Assembly: GCA_033442325.1 (NCBI GenBank)
Contig: JAWQFM010000009.1
Location: 1,281,672-1,345,671, forward strand
Direction: 5' to 3'
DNA length: 64,000 bases
Origin: Salpingoeca rosetta
Lineage: Eukaryota > Protista > Choanoflagellata
In this document: piece after piece, positions 52,131-64,000 of the stretch
How positions within the stretch are numbered: the first letter of the stretch is position 1
How the letters are laid out: the number at the start of each line of letters is the position of its first letter
Notes under the pieces: generated by a model
The model's input: only the letters and a program-made list of their open reading frames with translations
Database searches by the model: none
What the model was told of the DNA's origin: nothing
Translations under genes and position numbers: made by a program

Positions 52131-53691
52131 TCAATACACGGCCCGGCCACCGGAGAGATCGAAGCAGAACCCCGTGTTGAACGATGCCTCCTTGCTCACG
52201 ATAAATGCAACCGTTGCTGCCACTTCCTGAAGCAGGCCGCATCGCTTCATGGGTATCTTGTCCGTCATGTACTTGATCTGCTCCGGCTTCATTCCGGCAA
52301 CCATGGCTGGCGGCGCGGGGGAGCGAGTGATTGATTGGTAGCGGCACGGCGTGTGAGGCGTGGGTGCAGGGCGACAGACATTCACACACACACACACATA
52401 GACGTAGACGTAGACGTAGACAAAGACACACGGACACAGACACAGACAGACAGACAGAAAGACAGACAGACAGACAGACACAGACACAAAGGCACACAAA
52501 GGCACACGAACACACAGGCACACAAAGGCACACGAACACACAGGCTCAACCTGTTCTGATGACGGCTGGGGCCAGCGCGTTGACGGTGATGTTGGTTTCT
52601 GCATATTCCTTGCCGACAGCCTTGGCCAGCCCAATCACCCCTGCTTTACTTGTCGAGTAGGCACACATGCCCTGGAGCAGCAGCGAACGACAGCGGACCA
52701 GGCAAGGTTTGAGGGCACTGAAACGAAAGGTGGAACGGAGACATGGGGGGGGAGGTCGAGCAGAGATGCAACAGCACAGACACGCAGACGCACACAGACA
52801 CACACGCACGTACACAGACGCAAGCACGCACACACTCATACATACACATCACAGATGCTGGTGCTACGTACGGCGTTGCCATCTTTGCCGGCGATTGAGG
52901 CGATGAGCAAGATGCGTCCGTAGTCGTGCTTTGACATGAGCGGCAGGCAGTGTTTGGTCATGTTGAAGCTGCCTCTGAGGTTGACGGCAAGGACGCGATC
53001 AAACGCATCCCCTTCCACGTCCTCGATCTTGACACCGTGGGGCCCTGTAGCACATATTTGCATGTGCATGTGTGTGTGTGTGTGTGCGTGTGCATGTGTG
53101 TGTGTGAAAACACGTCTGTAGAGATCATGTGGCAAGAAAACGACACATACAAGACACATGCACACACGTAGCTGTAAGCGCACAAACGTGCAAGCTCACT
53201 TGGCACACACGTCGCTGTAAGCGCACAAACGTGCAAGCTCACTGGTACACACAATTTACACACACCATGCACACACAATTTACACACACCATGCACACAC
53301 AATTTACACACACCATGCACAATGCACACAAAAATACACACCATGCACACAAAAGCACACACAGACACACACAGGCAGCCACACACGCCTTGCACGTACC
53401 AACGATGCCTGCGCAGTTGATCATGATGTCGAGACGACCGTGTGCAGCCTCTACCGCTGCAAGCGCTGCCTTGACGCTCTCTTCACAGGCCACATCCACC
53501 TTGTGACAGCTCACATGCTTGATGTCATGCTGGGATGCCAGAGCATCTGCCGTCTCCTGCATGGCGTCATCCTTGACATCGAAGATGCAAATGGTGGCGC
53601 CCTCCTTTCCCAACCGCTCACACACCGCTCTCCCAATCCCACTCGCCCCACCAGTCACCACAGCCACCTGCCCACTGAACCGCTGCGCCAT
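52131..53691 (-). CDS. Classical short-chain dehydrogenase/reductase (FabG-like), 4 exons
   Basis: VVTGGASGIG; INCAGI; IASIAGKDGNA|GMCAYSTSKAG (YxxxK); C-terminus SFNTGFCFDLSGGRAVY. Confidence 0.92.
53161..53320. repeat. Intronic tandem repeats (2 x ~42 bp, then 3 x ~24 bp CACACAATTTACACACACCATG-like)
   Basis: Directly visible. Confidence 0.8.
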
Positions 53692-54580
53692 CGTGGGAGC
53701 TGCTTGCTGGCTTGTTTTTGTTTTTGTTGGCTTGCAGAAAATCGTGTCAAGATATAGCAAACACGTTCTTCCACACCCACGTGGCGATTTTTCTTTCATG
53801 CCCCTTCTTTCGCGTCTTGTGCTTCTTCGCTCGCCTCGCGTCCCTTGCCTTCTTGTTCGCGACTTTTTTCATGTGGTTGGTTGTGGGTGTCGAGCCAAAC
53901 AAACACTCCGCCTTCTTCGTATCTGTTCGCTTGCTTGGGTCTTGTGTCTTCCAAGCAAGCAAGCAAGCCATCGCACCGTTCTTGCGTGTGCTTCCTTTGC
54001 CTTGTTTCCTCCCTCCCTCCCTCCCTCTCTCTCTCTCTCTCTCTTTGTGCTGCTTGCTGAAGTGGCAGCGCCTTCCGACCACCAGGTTGCTGTCTTTGTG
54101 TGTGGAAGTCAGAATCACACCGCACACACACAAGACACACGACACACGATTGTAACGTCACACAACATCATCGCGGTCGGTCACTTACGGTGCACCACAA
54201 GCAAGCAATCCCGGCTCTTTTATTTGGTTGGTTTTGCGGGGTTGCACCATCGCACAAGGGCGGCAGCAACACTTGCTTTTGGCGGCTGACTTTTGGCTTT
54301 TGTTCTGGTTTGAGCCGCCGACCTACCTCAGTCACAACCACGTCCACGAAAAGCCACCTTCCGCGGGTGTGGTGCTACCTCTGACGTGAAGCATCGTTTC
54401 TTACCTCCACCCGTCTCAAGTGGAGCCACAACTCAAGGCACCCCAAGCCTTATTGACACACCCGTGTGTTCCCGATCCGCTTCTAGTTCCCACCTTGTTT
54501 CTGAGTGGTACACCACGCTCTTCTCAACGCGTGTTTGTTTTGAGGGGCCCCCTCAGCGAACTTGACTCAGCACCATCATC

Positions 54581-55672
54581 ATGAGCTCCGAGAGCGCCAA
54601 CAGTAAGTCCATGTGCACACACTTTGCGTGTGCTTGATGGTTGCGTGCGTCATGCGTGTGCGTGATGGTTGTGTGTGCGTGCCTCTGTATGCATCGCGTG
54701 TGCATCCGTATTTGCATGCCCTAGTGTGCTTGTCACCCCTGCATCGCGTGCGCTCACGCAGATGGCATTCAACTCGATTCCGTTGTCTGATTGTGGCGCA
54801 CCCATACAGGCTCTCGGACGACGTTCGGCGACGTGTGGTTTATTGGTAGCGCACACGTCAGCCATCACAGGCGCAGCGAAGATGTTGTCGGAGCCATGCG
54901 CGGCCTGACTCAGCTCAACTCTCCACAGTACGTTCCATGCCGTTCTTGCTGCTGCCATATTGCCATCATGTGGTGTCTGTGCGTGCGTGTGTGCGTTTGT
55001 GTGGTGCGTTGTGGGGCATGTGTGTGTATGTGCTGCGTTGTGCCACGTGTGTGTGTGTGTTCTCATGTTGTTGTGTCGAGCCAATGAACGTGGTGATGAA
55101 AAGCACTCGTATCATCCTGAGCTCACGTGTGGTTGGCGTTGCTCCAACCCGCAACAGATACGTCGCTGACGCAGACGCCGTCCAAGTGACCTTTGCCATC
55201 ACTCCTACACATGTCAAGTGCTTCACAACGAACAACAAGGTATGTTGCCGCTTGGTTTGTTTTCCCGCCAGCCTGCCGTGGTCGTCGTCTACATGGAATG
55301 TACACATGTGAAGGTTGGCGTGTGTGTCGATGTGTCGACTTGAATCCTTCTATCACCACTCAAGCCACATTTCACTTGCTGTGCTTTATTTAGGAGGAGC
55401 GCCTGTCTTCGCCGCTCCAACAAATATCCTACTCCTGCTGCGGTCCCGTGACAACAGAATTGAGGTGCGTTCACACCTCAAGTAGCAGCTGTGCTCTTTC
55501 GTTATCATATGGTGTTTGTGTTTTTGTGTTTGTGTGGTGTATGTGTTTGTGGTGTTTGTGTGTGTGTGTGTGTGGTGTTTGTGTGTGTGTGTGTGTTTCA
55601 GATTCGTCGATTGCATGGATCGTGGCCACGCATGATACACTCACTTTCACGCTCACACACGCTCACACGCTC

Positions 55673-55707
<35 letters not shown>

Positions 55708-56176
55708 CACACTCACACCCTCACACTCACATACTGCAGGCAGTACTTTGCGTACGTATGTACCAACTTCATCGGGGATATGCCGCTTGGGTTTATCTGC
55801 CACGTGTTTCGGGCGCAAGACAAGGAGGCCGCCGAAGCGGTGGTGACAGCCCTGGGCGAGGTGTTCCGCGCAGCGCGGGAAGGCAGCAGCACGGACACCA
55901 CCAGCGTGAGCGGGCGCTCCCTGCAGAGCGGTGACTCTGTGATATCGCAGACAAGCGAATCGCTGGCGTCGCGATCATCGCGGCTCAGCGGGCCCGCATC
56001 CGCCTCCATGGGCAGCGCACACGACAGCTGCGTCACCCAGTCCCCACCTGAGGAGAGCAAGAGCCTCATGTCGGCCGCTTCCGGCTCCAAGTCACTCGGT
56101 GGCGACACGGCCACACCACACAGCCACCTGGCACAGCCGCGACTGCAACAATTACAGCACCAGCAGCAGCAGCACC

Positions 56177-56208
<32 letters not shown>

Positions 56209-58839
56209 AATGACCATACACACCGCCACCACGAGTCGCAGGCGCAGCACAAGCGACAGCGTCACCTCCATGGGCCGTCTCAGTCGCCTGCGCAGGTGCA
56301 ACGGCTCCGTGGCAAGGGCCACCGGCGCACGCGCAGCGAAGGCGCCAATTGGACCATCACCAGGACATCGAGTGCCGCCAACGTGACCGCTTCGGGACAG
56401 CCGACATCGCTGCAGGTGCTGGAGCAGCGCGCCGCGCGTATCCACGCCCGCCTCCGCGCCCTGTCCATGCTCAAGGAGCACAAGGACGAGGAGGGCCAGA
56501 AGCACGCGCGGTCCTTCACGGGCGACGCCATTGTTACGTGGCTCGTCTCCCAGAAGGAGGTGGAAACGCGCGCCGAGGCGGTCCAGTTTATGCAGACGCT
56601 TTTGAGCAACGGCGTGATTGATGCCGTGGGCGCCAACCCGCTGACCCAGTTTCGCGACGGCAACCGCCTCTATGCGTTTGCTGTCGACGTGAAGCGCGCG
56701 AACCGGCGACGCCGCCAGCAGCAGCTGCAGGAGCTTGGCCTGTCCTCGAGCGGGCGCGGTGGCGCTGGCGGACGACAGCGCACGCGCGTTGCATCGTGGC
56801 ACGCGGCCGAGCTCTCTGGCAGCATCGAGTCGCTCGTGGAGCGCAACCGCAACGAGAACATGCCCTCGGACGAGCTCAGCCTGCACGTGGACACGAAGAA
56901 CCCGCTGCTGAACAAGGCGCTTGTGAGCATCCGCACCAATGACGGTGACGCCCTGGCAGAGGTGCTGCCCGAGATTGAGAAGAGCGCATCTGTGGAAGCA
57001 GAGGACGACGACGGCGCCGCAACTGGCGCAGCAACCCCTGTTGAGGCAGATGGCTCTGCCTCTACCACGTCGACGACGACGCCCACGCCCACGCCCATGC
57101 CCACGCCCACGCACGGCGATGACCGTCCAAGTGCCGATGCTGGTGGCGGGGACCGCCCGATTTCCATCCCGCGCGAGCAAGTGCTGTCGCAGCTGCTTTA
57201 TTTATCCCTGTCGGCAGAGGCGAGCCAGTGCACGGAGCACTTGCTGCATGTGCGATGCGTGGATGTGAACGCGCCACTGAACCAGGAGGGCGACACGGCC
57301 CTGCACCGTGCCGCCGCCTGCAACAACAAGGCGGTGGTGATGCAGCTGCTGGACAACGGCGCGGACGTCAACGCCACGAACGACAGCGGATGCACGCCGC
57401 TCTTCTTTGCCGCGCAAAAGGCAGAGAACCACGAGTGCAGCATCTTGCTGGTGGAGAACGGCGCCTGCGTGCGAGCGGTCAACGCAGACGGCAAGCGCCC
57501 GATTGACCTGCAGCCGGCGCTGGCAGAGGCGCAGCGCTGCCTGTGCCAGTCCATTGGCGATAACCTCGCTGGCGGCAACGACGAGCTGGGCTCCCTGCGC
57601 ACGCTGGCGCGGCTGTCCATCAACCCGGAGACGCACGCGCTCCTGTGTGACGAGCTGAAGAAGGAGAAGGTGTTTGACGCCCTGCAAGCACTGTGTCAGC
57701 GCAACGCAGACGCGTCTGCCCTGGTCGAGGCGTACGTCCACAACTCGACTGCGCTCACGGGCCGCGGCCTGCTGGACGAGGACATCCTGCAGACGGTGCT
57801 CACGCTGATCCACGTCGGGGGCGAGGTGCAGCAGACGTGCCTGCACTCGCTCCTCACGGGCCTGCACGCGTTTCCAGACCAGGACGTGGACTTTCTCGTC
57901 TCCCTGGCCAAGCTCGACTTCTTGCCGCTCTTCACCATGGTGTGCGATGCGGAGGCCAACAAGCAGGTGCGAACGGACCTGAGCGCGCTGCTTGTGCTGC
58001 TGACGCGCCTGCCCAAGGCTCGTCGGCGGCTCTGCGCAGATCACAGCAATCTTCAGCGCCTCGTCTCAGCCGTGCAACGCGAATTCGCCATCATGCAGGC
58101 AGAAGAGGAGGAGGAAGAGGCAAACGGCCAAGGGCGCGGGATGATGGGCGCGGAAGCTGTTGGCAATGACGTGTTCACGTCTGCTGCTGCCGCTGCTGCT
58201 GCCACGGACATGCATTCGCCTGGCTTGGTCGGCATCACTGGCCGCCTGCATGGTGCGGATGGGGATGGCCAGTCCTCGCTCCCAGCCCCCGTGCCGAGCG
58301 TTGGCAATGGTGATACACGCAGCAATAAGAGCAACAACAACAGCAACAGCAGCACCAAGGACAAGGGTGGTGCCGTGGGCGAGGAGAGCTCAGAGGAGGA
58401 CATTCAAGACGACGAGTTTGTGCACGGGTTCACGGAAGAAGACATTTTGCGCGCGGAGGCGCTTGAGGCCGAAGAAGCAGAGGCTATTCGCCGCGGTGAC
58501 AGCGGTCGACGTGGCGGCGATAGCGATGATGGCGACGATAGCGACGATGGTGACGATGTGGCAAGCGATGGTATTGTGTGTTCTCGGCGCACGAGCATGG
58601 CCACGACGGTGCTGACGGGCCTGCCCTCGCTCACGGCGGGCCTCTTATCCAACCTCGTCAGCATGCTCTCCAACCTTTGCCATGACCTGGATAGCCACAA
58701 GGTGCTGGAGCAAATGGGTGTTTCTGACCTGTTGGGCAAACTCTTTGCGCAGCCCCACGCGGCCATCCACAACGAAGCTGTCCTCTCCCTCGTCATCCTC
58801 GGCCATCAAGGTGCTTTGATTCGGCCCATGACTCCACGT

Positions 58840-58891
<52 letters not shown>

Positions 58892-61800
58892 CACGGCGAA
58901 GGGCCTCGGCTATTTTTTTTTTGTGTTATCTTGGTATCGTGACGCACTTCCTTTCGTCCACGGTACTTTCTCATCTCACTCACTGTGCTGTGGCATGAAC
59001 AGACGCTGGCGATGTGGAATTGCTAGCGCCTCTCCCAAACCCCGGCCCTCTTGTGCTCAACACAGATGAAATGATCATTGGTGAGCCCCAGCATGCGTAA
59101 TTGCTCTTTCTCTTCTCGCACAATGTTCTTCTTCTTCTTTTTTTTTTTTTTTTTGGCTCTCTCCGCTGCTCTCCGCTGCTCTCCGCTGCCTTCTCGCCTG
59201 TGCTTCTCCTCATCCTCATAATCGTCGTCGTCGTCATGGAACCGCACGCTTCCTTCTCAGACCATGCTGCTTTCCTTCTCGTCACCTTTACACTCACCCC
59301 CACTTTCACTCACCCACCACCGACCGCCACCACGGCTGCATTCACCGATCAACCGCTACAACTTCCCTTCTGTTCGCCTTCGTGTGCGTTGCAGATGCGA
59401 CATCTGGGCGTGGCTTGGCCGAAGATGATGGAGCTGGCGACTCGCCCATCGACGTGCGTTCACGTGCAGACACTGGCGCGACTACAACCACGGCCACCCT
59501 TTCGTCCACCCGCGGCTCGTTTGCTGCCCCAGCACCATCCGCCACAGTCGTGGGCGGTGCGGCACTGGGCGTGGCAGATGCCGAGGGCTTGTGGCACAAG
59601 CTGCGTGCGGGCAATCTGCTGACGTGTCTGTCGCTGCTGCTGCACCACAACATGCCGACCATTGCCACGATGGCCACGCTGCTGATTGTCCACCAGCACC
59701 ACGAACCGCTCGTTGTGTTTCGCCTGCTGGCACACGAGTTCCGGCGCCGCGGCGCCATGTCTGCGGATGTGTTTACGACGCATGACGAAGTGGCAGTCAC
59801 GCCGTCGCACGCGCGCACACTGCGGTTGCTGCGAGCGTGGCTGTTTGCGGTGCAGCCGCTGATGCATGAGCGCTCGGCCATGCAGGCGGAGGTCAAGGCA
59901 TTTTTGGAGCACATGCGCCTGCTGGGCCCCGCGTACGAGGCGGAGGCGGCGTGCTTGCAGCAGGTCCTGCGCATGGCGGAGAGCAGCGACCCAAACCCGT
60001 TTGGAAACGGCCCGCGCGCGCTGACGGAAACGCGCCACCAGTCGTCGTACGCCCAGGCTGCGCACAACCGGCTGTACGACAACGCCCGCCAGCGTGTGCT
60101 CTCCGGGAGCATCCCGATTCCAAAAGACATTGCTGCGACCTTGGCTGCGGTGCAGCTGGTGGTTGAGGAGTCAATTCGCCGCAAGCTTCTGCCGCACCAG
60201 CGATTGCCGCCAGACGTCACGCCGGCGTTCAAGGTCAAGTCGATCATGCCGCCCGCCTTTGCGCGCGGGCGCGACGTGCCTGCCCTGATCAAGGCCGAGT
60301 TCCAGAACATGTGCCGGCAGAGCGAGCGCGACGCCAAGCACACGTACGTCCACCTGTACAACCTCTCTGTTGCGCACGACTGCGTGTACTTCAACGTGAA
60401 GCAGCCGACCGACTCGAAGCGCCGCATCCCGCGCATCCTGGGCATCTCACCGCAGTACGTGTTTGTGATTGACGCCAAGACGAAGCGCGTGTTGCACACG
60501 CACGAGATTGTGTCGCTGCGCCGGTGGGAGCGGACGCGGGACCGCTCCGGCTGGTCCATGTTTGGCGCCAAGCAGGCATGCCTCATCTTCTTCTTCAGCA
60601 GCACGGAGCTTGTGGTCTACGCCGACGACGCACTCGTGGAGGAGGTGAGCGAAACGCTCATGGAGAAGATCCAATCGCACCCGTGCCTGCAGCAGCTGAG
60701 GGATTCGGATCACCAGGTCCTGTTTCCCACGACCATCACCAACCCCGGCTCGAAGAAGCGAGGCGCGCACCCGCCCCGCCCCTTGATGATTACGCCCTCG
60801 CGGTCCAAGCCGGCGGCAGGCCTTGCCCAGTCGGCACCGGCGTCCGGCGTGCGCACTCGCGCGGGCACCAGCACAGGGGCCAGCAGGGCGCAGGCCGCGG
60901 CGGTGGCGGCAACAGCATCGACGCGGGCGTCAATGGCGTCTGCGATGACGGCTGCAGACGAAGGCGGCGACAAGCTGGGCGCGCTCGGCGGGGCTGCTGC
61001 CAACCGCAACCAGAACGTGCATGCTGGCATGCGGCTGCGGTCACAGCGAAGCGGCACGTGGACGCAGGGAACATCCACAGCGGCGGGCGTGGGCGGGCGG
61101 TCGTCTGTGTCCACAAGGCCGGCGGCGTCGTCGTCGTCATCGGCGGCATCTGCGTCGACAGCCGCCATGTCTCCGGGTGCAACGGCAGCGGCGGCGCTGC
61201 GGGGCCGAGGCGGCAGCGGGCGCTCGCACGACGAAATGTCTGACGATGCCAGCGATCTGGATCTAGACATGTTCACGCCAGCCGACGAAGTCGCTGCGAA
61301 GAAGAAGCGTGAGCAGGACGCGCCAAAGCCAGGCGAACCACAGCCACAGGCACAGCCACAGGCACAACACCGCCAACAACGACAGCACCAGCACGAAGAT
61401 GCTTCACAACAGCAACAGCAACAACAAGGAAAGGGCCAAGAGCCGACCATGGGTGCGCAGCGGCGGAGCACTGCGCTGTCGCAATCACCGCAGCACGCCC
61501 AGTTCCGTGGGCGGGCGCACTCCCACTCCATCTCGCCACTGCACAAACAACTTCACGGTGGCAGCCGTGCTGGGCATGGTCCGGCTGGCAGCGGGTCACC
61601 GCTTCGCTCGCCGCTGTCGCAGCAACTGACGTCGCTGCTGTCATCACCTGCGGCCACGGGAGACAAGTCGTTCAGCAGCCTGCACAGCGGCAGTGAACGT
61701 GGCGTGTCGTCGCCAGAGACCAGCGTGCCAACGACGCCGCGGCCAGGGACGCCCATGTACACGGTGCGCAACACGCCAACAGGCTCTCGCGCCCACACGC

Positions 61801-64000
61801 CGACGCAGTCACGGCAGCAGTCCATGCCCACGTCGCCGCAGCTGGTGCGTCGCGCGGCAGCTCCTCCTGCGTTTTCACTATCCGTGTCACCACAGATGGC
61901 TAGCTCCCCTGGCACACTGGCGGCGGTTGCCCCTATGCACACGCTGTCCCCGTCCCGTCGGGCCGGCATTGCCGGCACCGGCACCGGGGGCGGTGCTGTT
62001 CCTCATCCGCAGCAGCCACGCCGCTCAACGCTGGGCGGGCCCATCAGCAGACCTACGCGCCAAGGCAAAGACGCCTCGCCCATGGCCACACAGATGGAAG
62101 GGGTGAGCGCAACACAGCCGCGGCAACAGCAGCACCAGTCGCAGCGCCAGCAGCGGCCACGGCGTCACAGCGATGCCGCGGCGTTTGTGCGGTCGCGCCG
62201 ACGCCTCAACTTGGAGGATGACAGCACGACGGCTGCTTCTGTTCCTGGCGCAGGTGTGGATTCAAAGCCGCGGCGCTCATCGTCACTCGTGGAGGAGGAC
62301 GAGGGCGATGTGGATGACGCACGCACCGGCAGCGCAGGGCAGTCGAAGACGCGGTCAGCCGGGCGAGGCCGCCGGAACAGCAGCAGCGATAAAGGCAGAA
62401 ACAGCAGCAGCGGCGGTAGCAAGAGCGGCGGGGGCTTCAGGATGAGTTTGCGGCGCGCACGGAGCAAGAGCGTGAGCAGCGGCTCGAGTTGTAGCAAGAG
62501 TGACACCCGCGCGTCGTCGTCGTCGTCGTCCTCACGTGGCGGGGCGGGCAGTGCAGCTTCACACAAGACGTCTGATGAAAACCACCAGCGTCGTCGTCGT
62601 GGCATTGCTCCGGGTAGTGGCAGTGCAGCTCTCGACCGCAACAGCGGCAGCAACAACGACAATGCCAATGCCTCGGATGGCAACAGGGCCAGCGCCTCTG
62701 ATGAGCGCGGGCGGAAGGACCAGCGCCAGCGTCAGCGCGGTGGCGACCAGCAGCCGCAGCCGCGTCACAGTGGCAGCAACAAGAAGAGCGGTGGTGCTCT
62801 CACGCGCGTGTCTGCGTCTGCTTGTGTTTTGTTTCCGACAAGCACGCGGGGCAGCGCCACTGCGACGACAGCCAGCGGAGGCACAGCCACGCTGGAGGTT
62901 GAGCTTCGTGGAAACATGGAGCTGTTGTGCGTGAATGAGCCTGCGGCGGTGCTCGCTGCCATGAACGTGGGCGGCAATAGCGGTCGCAGCAACGGTGGGG
63001 TTGGTGGTGGCCGCCCGAATCCGAACAACCAGCCCGTGCGGCGCGATCGCGTTGCATCGACGTCGCAGCCGCGCTCCAACATCTGCGGCTGTCCTGGTAC
63101 GCCCATGCTGCCGCCAACGTTTGATGTGCAGCGCATCACGGTGCGGGCGCTGTTGGAGTGCCCCGTGGAGCTTGCGCGGCAGATGACGCTGATTGAGCAC
63201 GACCTGTTTAAGGACGTGACCGTGGCGGAGTGCTTCCGCCGCATGGTGACGCCCGCGTCGCCGACGGCATCGTCGTCGCTGCCGTCGCTGCCGGGCCAGC
63301 ACGCGGACGCGGTGGTGCGGTGCATTGTGCGCTTCAACCAGGTGACGTCGTGGGTGGCGACCATCATTTTGGACGAGGAGGCGCTTGAGCAGCGCTGCTA
63401 TGTGATTGAGCAGCTGCTGCACGTGGCCCACCACTGCCACAAGCTGCGCAACTTCAACGGGGTAATGGCCATCATCTCTGCGCTTGGCACGGCGGCCGTG
63501 CGCCGGCTGAGCGACACGTGGGACGCACTGTCGGCCAAGGCGCTTGAGCTCCACGTGCGCCTGTCGACGGTGATGGCTGCGGAGAACAACTTCCGCAACT
63601 ACCGCGCGCTGCTGCGGGAAACGGCTGCGCCGTGCGTGCCGTACTTTGGCATGTACCTCCGCGACCTGACGTTCCTGCACCAGGGCAACCAGGACTTTGC
63701 GCGGCGTGGCATGCTGAACGTGACCAAGATGCGGCTGCTTGGGTCGCTGCTGACGGAGATGGCGGCGTACCAGGCGGGCACGTACAAGCTCTTGCTTGTG
63801 CCGGAGATTCACACGTTCCTGCTGCATGTGCAAGGGAAGAGCGAGGACGAGCTGTTTCGCCAGTCGCAGCAGCTGCAACCGCCGACGCTTCGCAAGCTGC
63901 AGCGGTCTGCCTCTCGTCAGCGTCCGCCATCTGCTGGCCGCAAGCAGAGCCTGTCCCGCAAGCTCTCCAGCCACAACCTCTCCTTTATGCGCGGCGCGTT
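54581..64000 (+). CDS. Large Ras-family GEF: PTB - DEP - ankyrin repeats - helical (ARM-like) region - REM - talin-like FERM F2/F3 - low-complexity linker - CDC25 domain (3' truncated)
   Basis: Exons ~54581-54602, 54810-54927, 55158-55239, 55394-55464, 55740-58810, 59066-59080 and 59395->64000 join in frame. Motifs: WFIGS...FAY...FICHVF (PTB); FTGDAIVTWL...FRDGNRLYAF (DEP); GDTALHRAA and GCTPLFFAA (ankyrin); ELARQMTLIEHDLF...LRNFNGVMAIISAL...PCVPYFGMYLRDLTFLHQGN (CDC25). Confidence 0.88.

What the first reader, a model, noticed from the sequence alone, without database searches (positions are those of the whole stretch)
54581..64000. One-protein signalling module: PTB-DEP-ANK-REM-[talin-type FERM]-CDC25 RasGEF
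Seen: hand splicing joins a PTB domain (54810-55875), DEP (~56500-56690), ankyrin repeats (~57270-57520), a REM-like segment (KLRAGNLLTCL...RTLRLLRAWL, ~59600-59850), a FERM-like F2-F3 (AATLAAVQL...AKHTYV...YFNVKQ...IPRILGISPQYVFVIDAKTKRVL...SLRRW, ~60060-60680) and a CDC25 domain (~63150-63880). The ORF track misses the >4.6-kb last exon. Knowledge: the F3 stretch follows the talin head pattern (FFLVKE...PRLLGIT...DEKTKEV...IKRW). DEP+REM+CDC25 is Epac-like, ANK+FERM is KRIT1-like, and PTB and FERM-F3 are both NPxY-reading folds. I know no animal RasGEF with this architecture. Inference: a receptor-tail reader fused directly to a Ras/Rap activator, possibly coupling receptor or adhesion signals to Rap in a pre-animal lineage.
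Basis: partly seen in the sequence, partly recalled or inferred. Interest (0 to 1): 0.85.

Follow-up and report, generated by a model that had tools for sequence, protein, structure and literature searches.

The report
Giant RasGEF with talin-like FERM
This is one real, expressed 2,684-residue gene for a Ras-family activator with two NPxY-reading-type domains, and it belongs to an unnamed protein family shared by choanoflagellates, Capsaspora, sponges and cnidarians that no search found in bilaterian animals.

Summary
RNA-seq junctions and assembled transcript contigs join seven GT-AG exons (54581 to 64007, seven bases past the window end) into one 8,055-nt ORF.

Every domain call was confirmed:
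- a Dab-type PTB
- DEP
- ankyrin repeats
- REM
- a talin-type F2-F3 with no F1 lobe
- a complete CDC25 domain

In a model of the closest ortholog, REM packs on CDC25 as in SOS, RasGRP2 and yeast Cdc25. F2-F3 and a long disordered linker therefore form an insertion inside a canonical catalytic module.

The architecture is not a one-off of a pre-animal lineage. The same PTB-DEP-ANK-REM-F2F3-CDC25 order occurs in at least four other choanoflagellates, Capsaspora (CAOG_03360), the sponges Oscarella and Sycon, and many cnidarians (Nematostella LOC5521422, Hydra, Acropora). All are labelled uncharacterised. No bilaterian member and no paper were found.

The most likely function is a Ras-family exchange factor recruited to the membrane or to receptor tails. 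The target is unresolved. I class it as a new variant of a known kind, of moderate interest.

The parts
54581..54602 (+). Exon 1, with the start codon at 54581
   Evidence: Junction 54602>54810 in three RNA runs and one contig. The N-terminus is collinear with choanoflagellate orthologs.
54810..54927 (+). Exon 2 (first part of the PTB)
   Evidence: Junctions 54602>54810 and 54927>55158, GT..AG.
55158..55239 (+). Exon 3 (PTB)
   Evidence: Junction 54927>55158, with 31 spliced reads and one contig. Junction 55237>55392 with cut +2 gives 55239>55394.
55394..55464 (+). Exon 4 (PTB)
   Evidence: X8 contig record 1 joins 55462>55738, with an ambiguous 'ag' on both sides. The GT..AG placement gives 55464>55740.
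55740..58810 (+). Exon 5: end of the PTB, Ser/Gln/His-rich linker, DEP, ankyrin repeats, conserved helical region
   Evidence: Continuous ORF, covered by RNA reads and contigs, with Pfam hits.
54810..55881 (+). Dab-type PTB/PID domain (residues ~13-145), split over exons 2-5
   Evidence: The family PTB profile gives 103 bits end to end on the spliced protein. The same profile hits ARH/LDLRAP1 at 3e-18, GULP1 at 2e-14 and Numb at 3e-14.
56476..56691 (+). DEP domain (residues ~344-415)
   Evidence: Pfam DEP 3.2e-14. The nearest solved structures are DEPTOR at 1.6e-17 and P-Rex1 at 5e-9.
57229..57546 (+). Ankyrin repeats (residues ~595-700)
   Evidence: Pfam Ank_2 2.3e-12 and Ank 3.3e-12. Generic ankyrin hits among solved structures.
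57547..58810 (+). Family-conserved helical region (residues ~700-880 and ~1046-1121), interrupted here by an acidic Gly/Ala/Asp/Glu-rich insert (~880-1045)
   Evidence: Collinear phmmer blocks with orthologs: 563-877 and 1046-1130 against P0003. No Pfam or solved-structure hit beyond the ankyrin part. Composition.
59003..59080 (+).
   Evidence: Junctions 58810>59003 (36 spliced reads and one contig) and 59080>59395 (25 reads and one contig).
59395..64000 (+). Exon 7, 4,613 nt, running to the stop codon at 64005-64007 just past the window end
   Evidence: The ORF is open from 59085 to the window end. The stop lies two codons further on in L001.
59574..59987 (+). REM (RasGEF_N) domain (residues ~1208-1345)
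   Evidence: The family profile A3 hits the SOS2 REM at 2e-10, and 11 of 14 family members hit Pfam RasGEF_N. All-helical in the AF2 model. Superposes with the REM of SOS, RasGRP2 and Cdc25 in the ortholog model.
60060..60371 (+). FERM F2 lobe (residues ~1370-1473)
   Evidence: Pfam FERM_M 27.7 bits, above the cut-off of 23.8. Talin F2-F3 by sequence at 1.6e-11 and by fold.
60384..60704 (+). FERM F3 lobe, PTB-like fold (residues ~1478-1584)
   Evidence: Pfam IRS 22.8 bits, above the cut-off of 22. Seven strands plus a C-terminal helix in the model. Aligns with talin's FFLVKE...PRLLGIT...IKRW stretch.
60720..63077 (+). Ser/Ala/Gly/Arg/Pro-rich linker of about 786 residues between F3 and CDC25, predicted disordered
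   Evidence: Composition. The equivalent linker of the ortholog (about 320 residues) has pLDDT near 30. No Pfam hits.
63078..63917 (+). CDC25-homology (RasGEF) catalytic domain (residues ~2376-2655)
   Evidence: Pfam RasGEF 2.6e-55 over the full profile. RasGRF1 1.5e-35, yeast Cdc25 7e-31, SOS2 3e-28. The hairpin motif PCVPYFGMYLRDLTFLHQGN is conserved across the family.

Best explanation
The locus is a single expressed gene of seven exons for a 2,684-residue multidomain exchange factor for a Ras-family GTPase.

**Catalytic module.** It is a canonical REM + CDC25 pair. The two halves lie about 1,030 residues apart in sequence, because a talin-type F2-F3 module and a long disordered linker are inserted between them. 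This is the position where Epac and PDZ-GEF carry an RA domain.

**Accessory domains.** The N-terminal half holds a Dab/ARH/Numb-type PTB domain, a DEP domain, ankyrin repeats and a conserved helical region.

**Most likely mechanism.** The PTB and the talin-like F3 are both NPxY-tail-binding folds. They, the basic membrane-facing surfaces of F2-F3, and the DEP domain would bring the protein to the plasma membrane or to cytoplasmic tails of receptors. That would place the REM-CDC25 module next to its lipid-anchored GTPase and switch it on locally.

**Shown here:** transcript continuity, the identity of each domain, the talin-type nature of F2-F3, conservation of the whole architecture across Holozoa, and canonical REM-CDC25 packing in a model of the ortholog.

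**Inferred, not shown:** exchange activity, NPxY and lipid binding, recruitment as the regulatory principle, and the identity of the GTPase. I lean towards Ras/R-Ras-type over Rap, at about 55:30.
For: **One transcript.** Spliced reads and contigs join all exons, and the library's strand bias is uniform across the locus. The ORF is intact at 2,684 residues. The spliced protein is collinear from PTB to CDC25 with complete transcriptome ORFs of other choanoflagellates, for example P0003.

**Domains.**

**REM-CDC25 packing.** In the AF2 model of ortholog P0001 (51-55% identical), VIA-align superposes model residues 17..988 on REM+CDC25 structures:
- RasGRP2: Z 29.1, 349 residues aligned
- yeast Cdc25: Z 28.2, 375 aligned
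- SOS1: Z about 26, about 370 aligned
- the CDC25-only chain 2ije: 232 aligned

The extra ~140 aligned residues mean the REM is docked as in known GEFs.

**Conservation.** The hairpin motif PxVPYFGxYLxDLTF..GN and many CDC25 positions are invariant across 18 family members. The full architecture is conserved from choanoflagellates to cnidarians, which argues for selection on the combination.

**Talin-like features of F3.** It keeps the basic loop (KQPTDSKRRIPR against talin's KEKMKGKNKLVPR) and the R-W of talin's IKRW.
Against: - No biochemical evidence exists for any family member, and no paper was found.
- The window's own REM is too diverged for Pfam.
- REM-CDC25 docking was modelled on the ortholog, not on the window's protein, and AF2 may reproduce the canonical arrangement from learned structures.
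- The FERM lacks F1, so it is not a complete FERM.
- The Trp of the talin-like 'RW' is replaced in some family members: M in P0003, F in P0005 and P0009.
- From my own knowledge, not tested here, choanoflagellates lack beta-integrins, so talin's classical ligand is probably absent in this organism.
- The acidic pair of the CDC25 hairpin ('EEG' in most GEFs) reads 'HQG' here. Its significance is unknown.
Confidence: 0.72

Rival explanations
1. The protein is a Rap-specific GEF that links adhesion-receptor tails, read by the talin-type F3, directly to Rap activation. It would be a one-protein version of the Rap1-talin adhesion axis.
For: - F2-F3 is specifically talin-like.
- The REM-insert-CDC25 layout and the presence of a DEP recall Epac and PDZ-GEF.
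- The best structural superposition of the catalytic module is RasGRP2 bound to Rap1B, at Z 29.1, but that is tied within about 1-3 Z units with Cdc25 and SOS.
- The family is present in Capsaspora, which has integrins (my own knowledge, not tested here).
Against: - The CDC25 sequence is clearly nearer the Ras-type GEFs: RasGRF1 126 bits, yeast Cdc25 111, SOS2 102. The Rap GEFs score lower: RasGRP2 82, Epac2 82, RAPGEF6/2 about 80-85.
- No cNMP, RA or PDZ domain is present.
- The DEP is of the DEPTOR/P-Rex type.
- The Rap-binding lobes of talin (F0, F1) are absent.
Confidence: 0.28
2. The PTB, F2-F3 and DEP domains act mainly as intramolecular regulators or scaffolding surfaces, for example by autoinhibiting the CDC25 site or binding other cytosolic proteins, rather than as readers of receptor tails. 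The protein would be activated by release of autoinhibition, through phosphorylation of the long Ser-rich linkers or through lipid binding.
For: - Many multidomain GEFs (SOS, Epac, P-Rex, RasGRP) are autoinhibited by accessory domains (established knowledge).
- The linkers are very long and Ser/Arg/Pro-rich.
- Talin F3 itself takes part in autoinhibition by binding the talin rod (6r9t appears among the hits).
Against: - No conserved internal NPxY or NPxF motif that could serve as an intramolecular ligand exists outside the CDC25 hairpin.
- The tools report no inter-domain confidence, so no contact between F2-F3 and REM-CDC25 could be assessed.
Confidence: 0.2
3. The CDC25 domain is catalytically inactive, a pseudo-GEF scaffold like BCAR3/SH2D3, and the protein is an adaptor only.
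For: The hairpin acidic pair is replaced by His-Gln in this species. Inactive CDC25 folds exist (established knowledge).
Against: - The Pfam RasGEF match covers the full profile at 187 bits.
- A REM is present and is modelled in the canonical supporting position.
- The hairpin and many catalytic-core columns are invariant over more than 600 Myr of divergence.
- The animal members keep an acidic residue (IAEGN, ITDGN).
Confidence: 0.06
4. There are two adjacent genes, PTB-DEP-ANK and REM-FERM-CDC25, joined only by read-through or by an assembly artefact.
For: The contigs of run X8 break at 56147-56218, and the closest ortholog contig, P0001, contains only the last exon.
Against: - The break lies inside exon 5, at a CAG repeat, not between the two halves.
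- One 7,870-nt contig and 61 spliced reads bridge 58810>59003>59080>59395 in frame.
- Independent complete ORFs in more than 10 species carry both halves.
Confidence: 0.02

Closest known systems
Talin head, F2-F3 subdomains
   Same: It is the best match by sequence (talin-1 F2-F3 at 1.6e-11) and by fold (the top 24 Foldseek hits, TM 0.73-0.82 by target). The F2 'SxRDAKHxY' helix, the basic F3 loop, the 'PR(I/L)LGI(S/T)' strand and the 'RW' are shared.
   Different: There are no F0 or F1 lobes, no rod, no vinculin- or actin-binding sites. F2-F3 sits between the REM and CDC25 of a GEF. Identity is only about 22-30%.
SOS / RasGRF1 / yeast Cdc25 (REM-CDC25 Ras exchange factors)
   Same: These are the nearest CDC25 sequences. 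The REM profile hits the SOS REM. The modelled REM-CDC25 packing superposes at Z 26-28 over about 370 residues.
   Different: There are no DH-PH, histone-fold, IQ or SH3 modules. REM and CDC25 are separated by about 1,030 residues holding a folded insert. The accessory domains are entirely different.
Epac (RAPGEF3/4) and PDZ-GEF (RAPGEF2/6)
   Same: A folded domain is inserted between REM and CDC25 (RA there, F2-F3 here). Epac also has a DEP domain.
   Different: There is no cyclic-nucleotide-binding, RA or PDZ domain. The DEP is of another subtype (Epac2 at E 0.037 against DEPTOR at 1.6e-17). The CDC25 is less similar than to the Ras-type GEFs.
KRIT1/CCM1 (ANK + FERM, Rap1 effector, binds the ICAP1 PTB)
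   Same: Ankyrin repeats lie upstream of a FERM-type module. KRIT1 appears among the fold hits, at E about 1e-7.
   Different: KRIT1 has a full F1-F2-F3 directly after the ankyrin repeats, a Nudix-like N-terminus with NPxY motifs, and no GEF domain. Here about 670 residues (helical region plus REM) separate ANK from F2, F1 is missing, and talin is clearly the closer relative.
FARP1/FARP2 (FERM-DH-PH RhoGEFs)
   Same: They are a functional analogue: a FERM module fused to a small-GTPase exchange factor, thought to target it to membrane receptors. This is from my own knowledge and was not tested here.
   Different: They use a different GEF fold (Dbl-homology, for Rho GTPases) and a complete N-terminal band-4.1-type FERM. 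They are not homologous as a whole.
ARH/LDLRAP1, GULP1/CED-6, Numb (Dab-like PTB adaptors)
   Same: The family PTB profile matches these at 3e-18 to 3e-14. They are phosphotyrosine-independent NPxY readers of endocytic and engulfment receptors (established knowledge).
   Different: Those are small adaptors without enzymatic domains. Here the PTB is the N-terminus of a 2,684-residue GEF.

Membership tests
CDC25-homology RasGEF superfamily | CDC25-homology catalytic domain | tested here: met
   Pfam RasGEF 2.6e-55, profile positions 1-181 of 181. RasGRF1 1.5e-35.
CDC25-homology RasGEF superfamily | REM (RasGEF_N) domain | tested here: met
   The window's own sequence has no Pfam hit. It aligns with orthologs of which 11 of 14 hit RasGEF_N, and the family profile hits the SOS2 REM at 2e-10.
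CDC25-homology RasGEF superfamily | REM packs against CDC25 in the canonical orientation | tested here: inconclusive
   Met in the AF2 model of ortholog P0001 (VIA-align Z 26-29 with about 350-375 residues aligned against 232 for CDC25 alone). Not modelled for the window's own protein, and it is a prediction only.
CDC25-homology RasGEF superfamily | Nucleotide-exchange activity on a Ras-family GTPase | not testable with these tools
   Needs a biochemical assay.
FERM domain (three-lobed F1-F2-F3) | F2 acyl-CoA-binding-protein-like helical lobe | tested here: met
   FERM_M 27.7 bits, above the cut-off of 23.8. Helices 176-279 of the model.
FERM domain (three-lobed F1-F2-F3) | F3 PTB/PH-like lobe | tested here: met
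   IRS-type PTB 22.8 bits, above the cut-off of 22. Beta-sandwich plus C-terminal helix. Talin F2-F3 fold match.
FERM domain (three-lobed F1-F2-F3) | F1 ubiquitin-like lobe | tested here: not met
   Only a low-confidence linker of about 25 residues lies between the last REM helix and F2. No strand-containing domain lies upstream, in any of 13 family members.
Talin | F0-F1 lobes, helical-bundle rod and I/LWEQ actin-binding domain | tested here: not met
   There are no such Pfam hits on either long exon. Only F2-F3 is shared.
Epac / RAPGEF3-4 | Cyclic-nucleotide-binding domain and RA domain | tested here: not met
   There is no cNMP_binding or RA hit at E<=1, nor in 11 orthologs.
KRIT1/CCM1 | Nudix-like N-terminus with NPxY motifs, and KRIT1-type ankyrin repeats joined directly to a full FERM | tested here: not met
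   The window's protein has no NPxY/F motif. Ank_KRIT1 appears only at 18 bits against a cut-off of 80, in the Nematostella member. F1 is absent.
Dab-like (phosphotyrosine-independent) PTB domains | Sequence-profile similarity to ARH/GULP/Numb/Dab PTBs | tested here: met
   The family profile scores 3e-18 against ARH, 2e-14 against GULP1 and 3e-14 against Numb. The window's spliced N-terminus matches that profile at 103 bits.
Dab-like (phosphotyrosine-independent) PTB domains | Binding of NPxY peptides and phosphoinositides | not testable with these tools
   Needs peptide and lipid binding assays.

The most novel reading that the evidence does not exclude
This would be an ancient holozoan exchange factor, predating animals and retained in sponges and cnidarians but lost in bilaterians. 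Its talin-type F3 and Dab-type PTB would dock directly on NPxY tails of adhesion or endocytic receptors. A receptor tail would then switch on Ras or Rap through a single polypeptide, without the Grb2-SOS or Rap1-RIAM-talin relays used in bilaterians.
Probability: 0.3. Interest if true: 0.72.

Novelty: new variant of a known kind. Interest (0 to 1): 0.55.

Why it matters
Ras and Rap exchange factors are classified largely by their accessory domains, and these determine which upstream signal they read. This is a whole family with an undescribed combination. A talin-type F2-F3 is inserted inside the REM-CDC25 module, and a Dab-type PTB, a DEP and ankyrin repeats lie upstream.

The family is conserved from choanoflagellates and Capsaspora to sponges and cnidarians. 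None of the searches found it in bilaterians. That pattern makes it a candidate for ancestral holozoan adhesion or endocytosis-to-GTPase signalling that model-organism biology would have missed.

It also adds a talin-related F2-F3 outside talin itself, which bears on how the integrin-adhesion toolkit was assembled before animals. Choanoflagellates, Capsaspora and Nematostella are genetically tractable (my own knowledge), so the hypothesis can be tested directly.

Two cautions apply. Lineage-specific domain shuffles are common in choanoflagellate signalling proteins. No function has been shown for any member.

Tried and rejected
- **Literature.** Searches on RasGEF+FERM+choanoflagellate or Nematostella, on 'CDC25 homology domain', and on the accessions CAOG_03360, LOC5521422, A7RH05 and A0A0D2WMZ1 found nothing on this family.
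- **Earlier notes of this scan.** Nothing relevant came up by place or by words.
- **Internal NPxY/NPxF ligand.** A scan for a conserved motif that could bind the PTB or F3 in cis found none outside the CDC25 hairpin 'GNPDY'.
- **Foldseek on the 1,028-residue ortholog model.** It aligned only the CDC25 domain and could not show REM docking. VIA-align could.
- **ESM Atlas feature search on the CDC25 domain.** It returned only generic 'RasGEF domain-containing protein' clusters, with no information on specificity.
- **CDC25 phylogeny for Ras versus Rap.** Not attempted.
- **Frame error.** One search of solved structures failed on a frame error and was repeated in the right frame.
- **By-eye exon.** An exon I read at 55081 was rejected, because RNA-seq puts the acceptor at 55158.
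- **Paralogs.** The genome has no second copy of this F2-F3.


Full report
**Setting**

The window is G000:C9:1281672-1345671 of a 55.4-Mb, 68-contig eukaryotic genome. It has GT-AG introns rich in CA/TG microsatellites and GC-rich exons, about 65%. The closest relatives of the protein are choanoflagellate sequences. From genome size and these relatives I take the organism to be a choanoflagellate, probably Salpingoeca rosetta.

**Gene model**

The ORF list omits the last exon because that ORF runs off the window. Plain frame translation shows two long open stretches: 55636-58884, and 59085 to the window end. The flanking genome locus L001 shows the second one ending two codons past the window.

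I laid three stranded RNA-seq runs and the contigs of a fourth run on 54401-60400. After the stated 'cut' offsets this gave GT..AG junctions at 54602>54810, 54927>55158, 55239>55394, 58810>59003 and 59080>59395. Contig pieces add 55464>55740, where raw reads were skipped over a CA repeat. Nearly all pairs have the first mate on the minus strand across the whole locus, as expected for one plus-strand transcript in a standard stranded library.

One 7,870-nt contig runs from 56219 across both downstream introns to beyond 60400. Another runs from upstream of 54401 through exons 1-4 to 56146. The gap between them (56147-56218) is a CAG repeat inside exon 5, not an intergenic space.

Joining the seven exons gives 8,055 nt, 2,684 codons, with no internal stop, and all splice sites are canonical.

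The junction 58810>59066 is wrong: the acceptor is at 59003, so exon 6 is 78 nt. My own by-eye exon at 55081 was also wrong.

Independent support comes from homologs. The spliced protein is collinear, block by block from PTB to CDC25, with complete transcriptome ORFs of other choanoflagellates. Its N-terminus, residues 13-178, matches a PTB profile built from orthologs end to end, with no disturbance at the exon joins, at 103 bits.

**Domains**

| Domain | Evidence |
|---|---|
| PTB | The family profile hits ARH/LDLRAP1 (3e-18), GULP1, Numb, ANKS1B, APPL1, X11, Fe65 and Dab, which are the phosphotyrosine-independent 'Dab-like' class |
| DEP | Pfam 3.2e-14; nearest solved DEPs are DEPTOR (1.6e-17) and P-Rex1; Epac2 only 0.037 |
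| Ankyrin repeats | Pfam Ank 3e-12; generic ankyrin hits |
| Helical region | Follows the ankyrins, conserved in the family, no known-family match; split here by an acidic low-complexity insert |
| REM | The window's own sequence misses Pfam RasGEF_N; 11 of 14 aligned family members hit it; the family profile finds the SOS2/SOS1 REM at 2e-10 to 3e-8 |
| FERM F2 and F3 | FERM_M 27.7 bits and IRS-type PTB 22.8 bits, both just over the curated cut-offs |
| CDC25 | Pfam RasGEF 2.6e-55 over the full profile |

The FERM calls are much stronger by other measures. A sequence search of solved structures gives only talins: talin-1 F2-F3 at 1.6e-11, then 23 more talin entries, then myosin VIIa at 0.0078. 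An AF2 model of residues 1195-1600 has mean pLDDT 77 and shows a helical REM, a helical F2 and a seven-stranded F3 with a C-terminal helix. Its top 24 Foldseek matches are all talin F2-F3 or talin head, at E about 1e-10 and TM by target 0.73-0.82. KRIT1, kindlin, myosin X/VII, ERM and FAK follow at 1e-7 or weaker.

There is no F1 lobe. Only a low-confidence linker of about 25 residues separates the last REM helix from F2, in all family members. 'Talin-type F2-F3' is therefore correct, and 'FERM' is correct only in part.

**Catalytic module**

The nearest solved relatives of the CDC25 domain are RasGRF1 (1.5e-35), yeast Cdc25 (7e-31) and SOS2/SOS1 (3e-28 to 1e-26). The Rap GEFs RasGRP2 and Epac2 score about 5e-22. 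In the large protein database the nearest named non-family hits are insect SOS and a fungal RasGEF, then RAPGEF6/2.

The helical-hairpin motif PxVPYFGxYLxDLTF..GN is conserved across the family. Choanoflagellates read 'LHQGN' or 'LHHGN' where animals read 'IAEGN' or 'ITDGN'.

The window's protein is too long to fold whole. I therefore modelled the 1,028-residue ortholog P0001, which has the order REM, F2-F3, a linker of about 320 residues, then CDC25, using an 18-sequence family alignment. The folded parts are confident and the linker has pLDDT about 30.

VIA-align superposes model residues 17..988 on REM+CDC25 structures: RasGRP2 at Z 29.1 with 349 residues aligned, yeast Cdc25 at Z 28.2 with 375, and SOS1 at Z about 26 with about 370. 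The CDC25-only chain 2ije aligns over 232 residues. The roughly 140 extra aligned residues are the REM. The model therefore places REM on CDC25 in the canonical way, and F2-F3 plus the linker form an insertion within the catalytic module. This is the position that the RA domain occupies in Epac and PDZ-GEF. It is a prediction on an ortholog, not a measurement.

**A conserved family, not a one-off**

An exhaustive HMMER search with the REM-F2F3 stretch found 14 proteins matching across REM and FERM, ahead of the talins. Pfam on 11 of them shows the same order, PID-DEP-ANK-RasGEF_N-FERM_M-IRS-RasGEF. Individual hits drop out only in the weaker or partial sequences.

Their sources:
- Choanoflagellates: Salpingoeca infusionum, S. 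macrocollata, S. urceolata and Choanoeca perplexa.
- Filasterea: Capsaspora owczarzaki CAOG_03360, 'hypothetical protein'.
- Sponges: Oscarella pearsei and Sycon ciliatum. The Sycon protein's source calls it 'Talin-1', which is a mislabel driven by the F2-F3.
- Cnidaria: Nematostella vectensis LOC5521422, 'uncharacterized'.
- Several environmental contigs.

A search seeded with the Nematostella REM-F2F3 found orthologs in Actinia, Actinostola, Oculina, Acropora, Rhopilema and Hydra, plus Sycon, and no bilaterian.

The family is thus holozoan-wide and present in non-bilaterian animals. Its absence from Bilateria is an observation within the sensitivity of these two searches, not a proof. The genome of the window has a single copy of this F2-F3 and roughly ten RasGEF loci.

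**How it probably works**

Shown here:
- one transcript and one ORF
- a complete, conserved REM-CDC25 module
- a talin-type F2-F3 and a Dab-type PTB
- a DEP domain and ankyrin repeats
- conservation of the combination over very long evolutionary distances

Inferred from established knowledge of these domain families:
- Dab-like PTBs and talin F3 bind NPxY-type tails, and both also bind acidic phosphoinositides.
- Talin F2-F3 lies flat on the membrane through basic patches. The corresponding F3 loop here is still basic, and the R-W of talin's IKRW is kept.
- DEP domains are membrane- or receptor-targeting modules.
- CDC25 GEFs act on lipid-anchored GTPases and are commonly controlled by recruitment.

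The best reading is therefore a Ras-family GEF recruited by membrane or receptor tails. The long Ser/Arg/Pro-rich linkers may serve as regulatory (phosphorylation) or tethering segments.

The target GTPase is open. Sequence proximity favours Ras-type GEFs. The layout (DEP, an insert between REM and CDC25) and the talin link make Rap a live alternative. I found no conserved internal NPxY motif that would suggest cis-autoinhibition through the PTB or F3.

The observation and the core architecture are confirmed. The Epac and KRIT1 analogies are superficial. There are no cNMP or RA domains, the DEP is of a different subtype, F1 is missing, and talin rather than KRIT1 is the nearest FERM. The claim that the layout is unknown in animals is corrected: cnidarians and sponges have it, uncharacterised.

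**Novelty and score**

No paper or annotation describing the family was found, and every database name is 'hypothetical' or 'uncharacterized'. It is a new variant of a known kind, a CDC25-type RasGEF. It is of interest for the evolution of adhesion and endocytosis-to-GTPase signalling at the origin of animals. That interest is tempered by the frequency of lineage-specific domain shuffles in these organisms and by the lack of any functional evidence.

Noticed in passing
window 57079-57112: RNA depth rises about five- to ten-fold over a 34-nt (ACGCCC)n-like stretch that codes TPTPTPMPTPT. About 100 reads per run have loose ends on both sides, and there is an apparent T>C at 57098. This looks like cross-mapping from another abundant transcript that shares the repeat, not editing or a variant of this gene.
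   Followed up: partly
window 56147-56218: A CAG/CAC repeat coding a poly-Gln/His run (QQLQHQQQQHHHHHHQQQQQQ) lies inside exon 5. Short-read contigs break here and reads were skipped as repeats.
   Followed up: partly
window 57547-58810 (residues ~700-1121): A helical region after the ankyrin repeats is conserved in the family but matches no Pfam family or solved structure. In this species it is split by a 166-residue Gly/Ala/Asp/Glu-rich insert. It could be a new repeat or ARM-like domain.
   Followed up: partly
window 60720-63077: The linker between F3 and CDC25 is about 786 residues here, against about 320 in the closest ortholog, P0001. It is Ser/Ala/Gly/Arg-rich and predicted disordered.
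   Followed up: partly
window 52836-53799, minus strand: The divergent upstream neighbour looks like a short-chain dehydrogenase/reductase. It has the TGGASGIG Rossmann motif in the ORF 53239-53799, with a further exon around 52836-53183.
   Followed up: no
P0010 (Sycon ciliatum, EukProt): The sponge family member is labelled 'Talin-1' by its source, although it has ANK, RasGEF_N and F2-F3 and no talin rod. The likely cause is annotation transfer from the F2-F3 match.
   Followed up: partly
G000:C16:219129-219689: A second strong RasGEF locus in the same genome, at 191 bits, lies in an 1,844-residue open frame. It did not appear in the search with this F2-F3, so it is presumably another large multidomain RasGEF.
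   Followed up: no
L002:1-97: The ortholog contig P0001 has an in-frame stop and a T-rich tract just upstream of its first Met, at the position of the window's intron 6 acceptor. The contig is probably genomic or unspliced and shows only the last exon, so that species' N-terminal half is unknown.
   Followed up: partly
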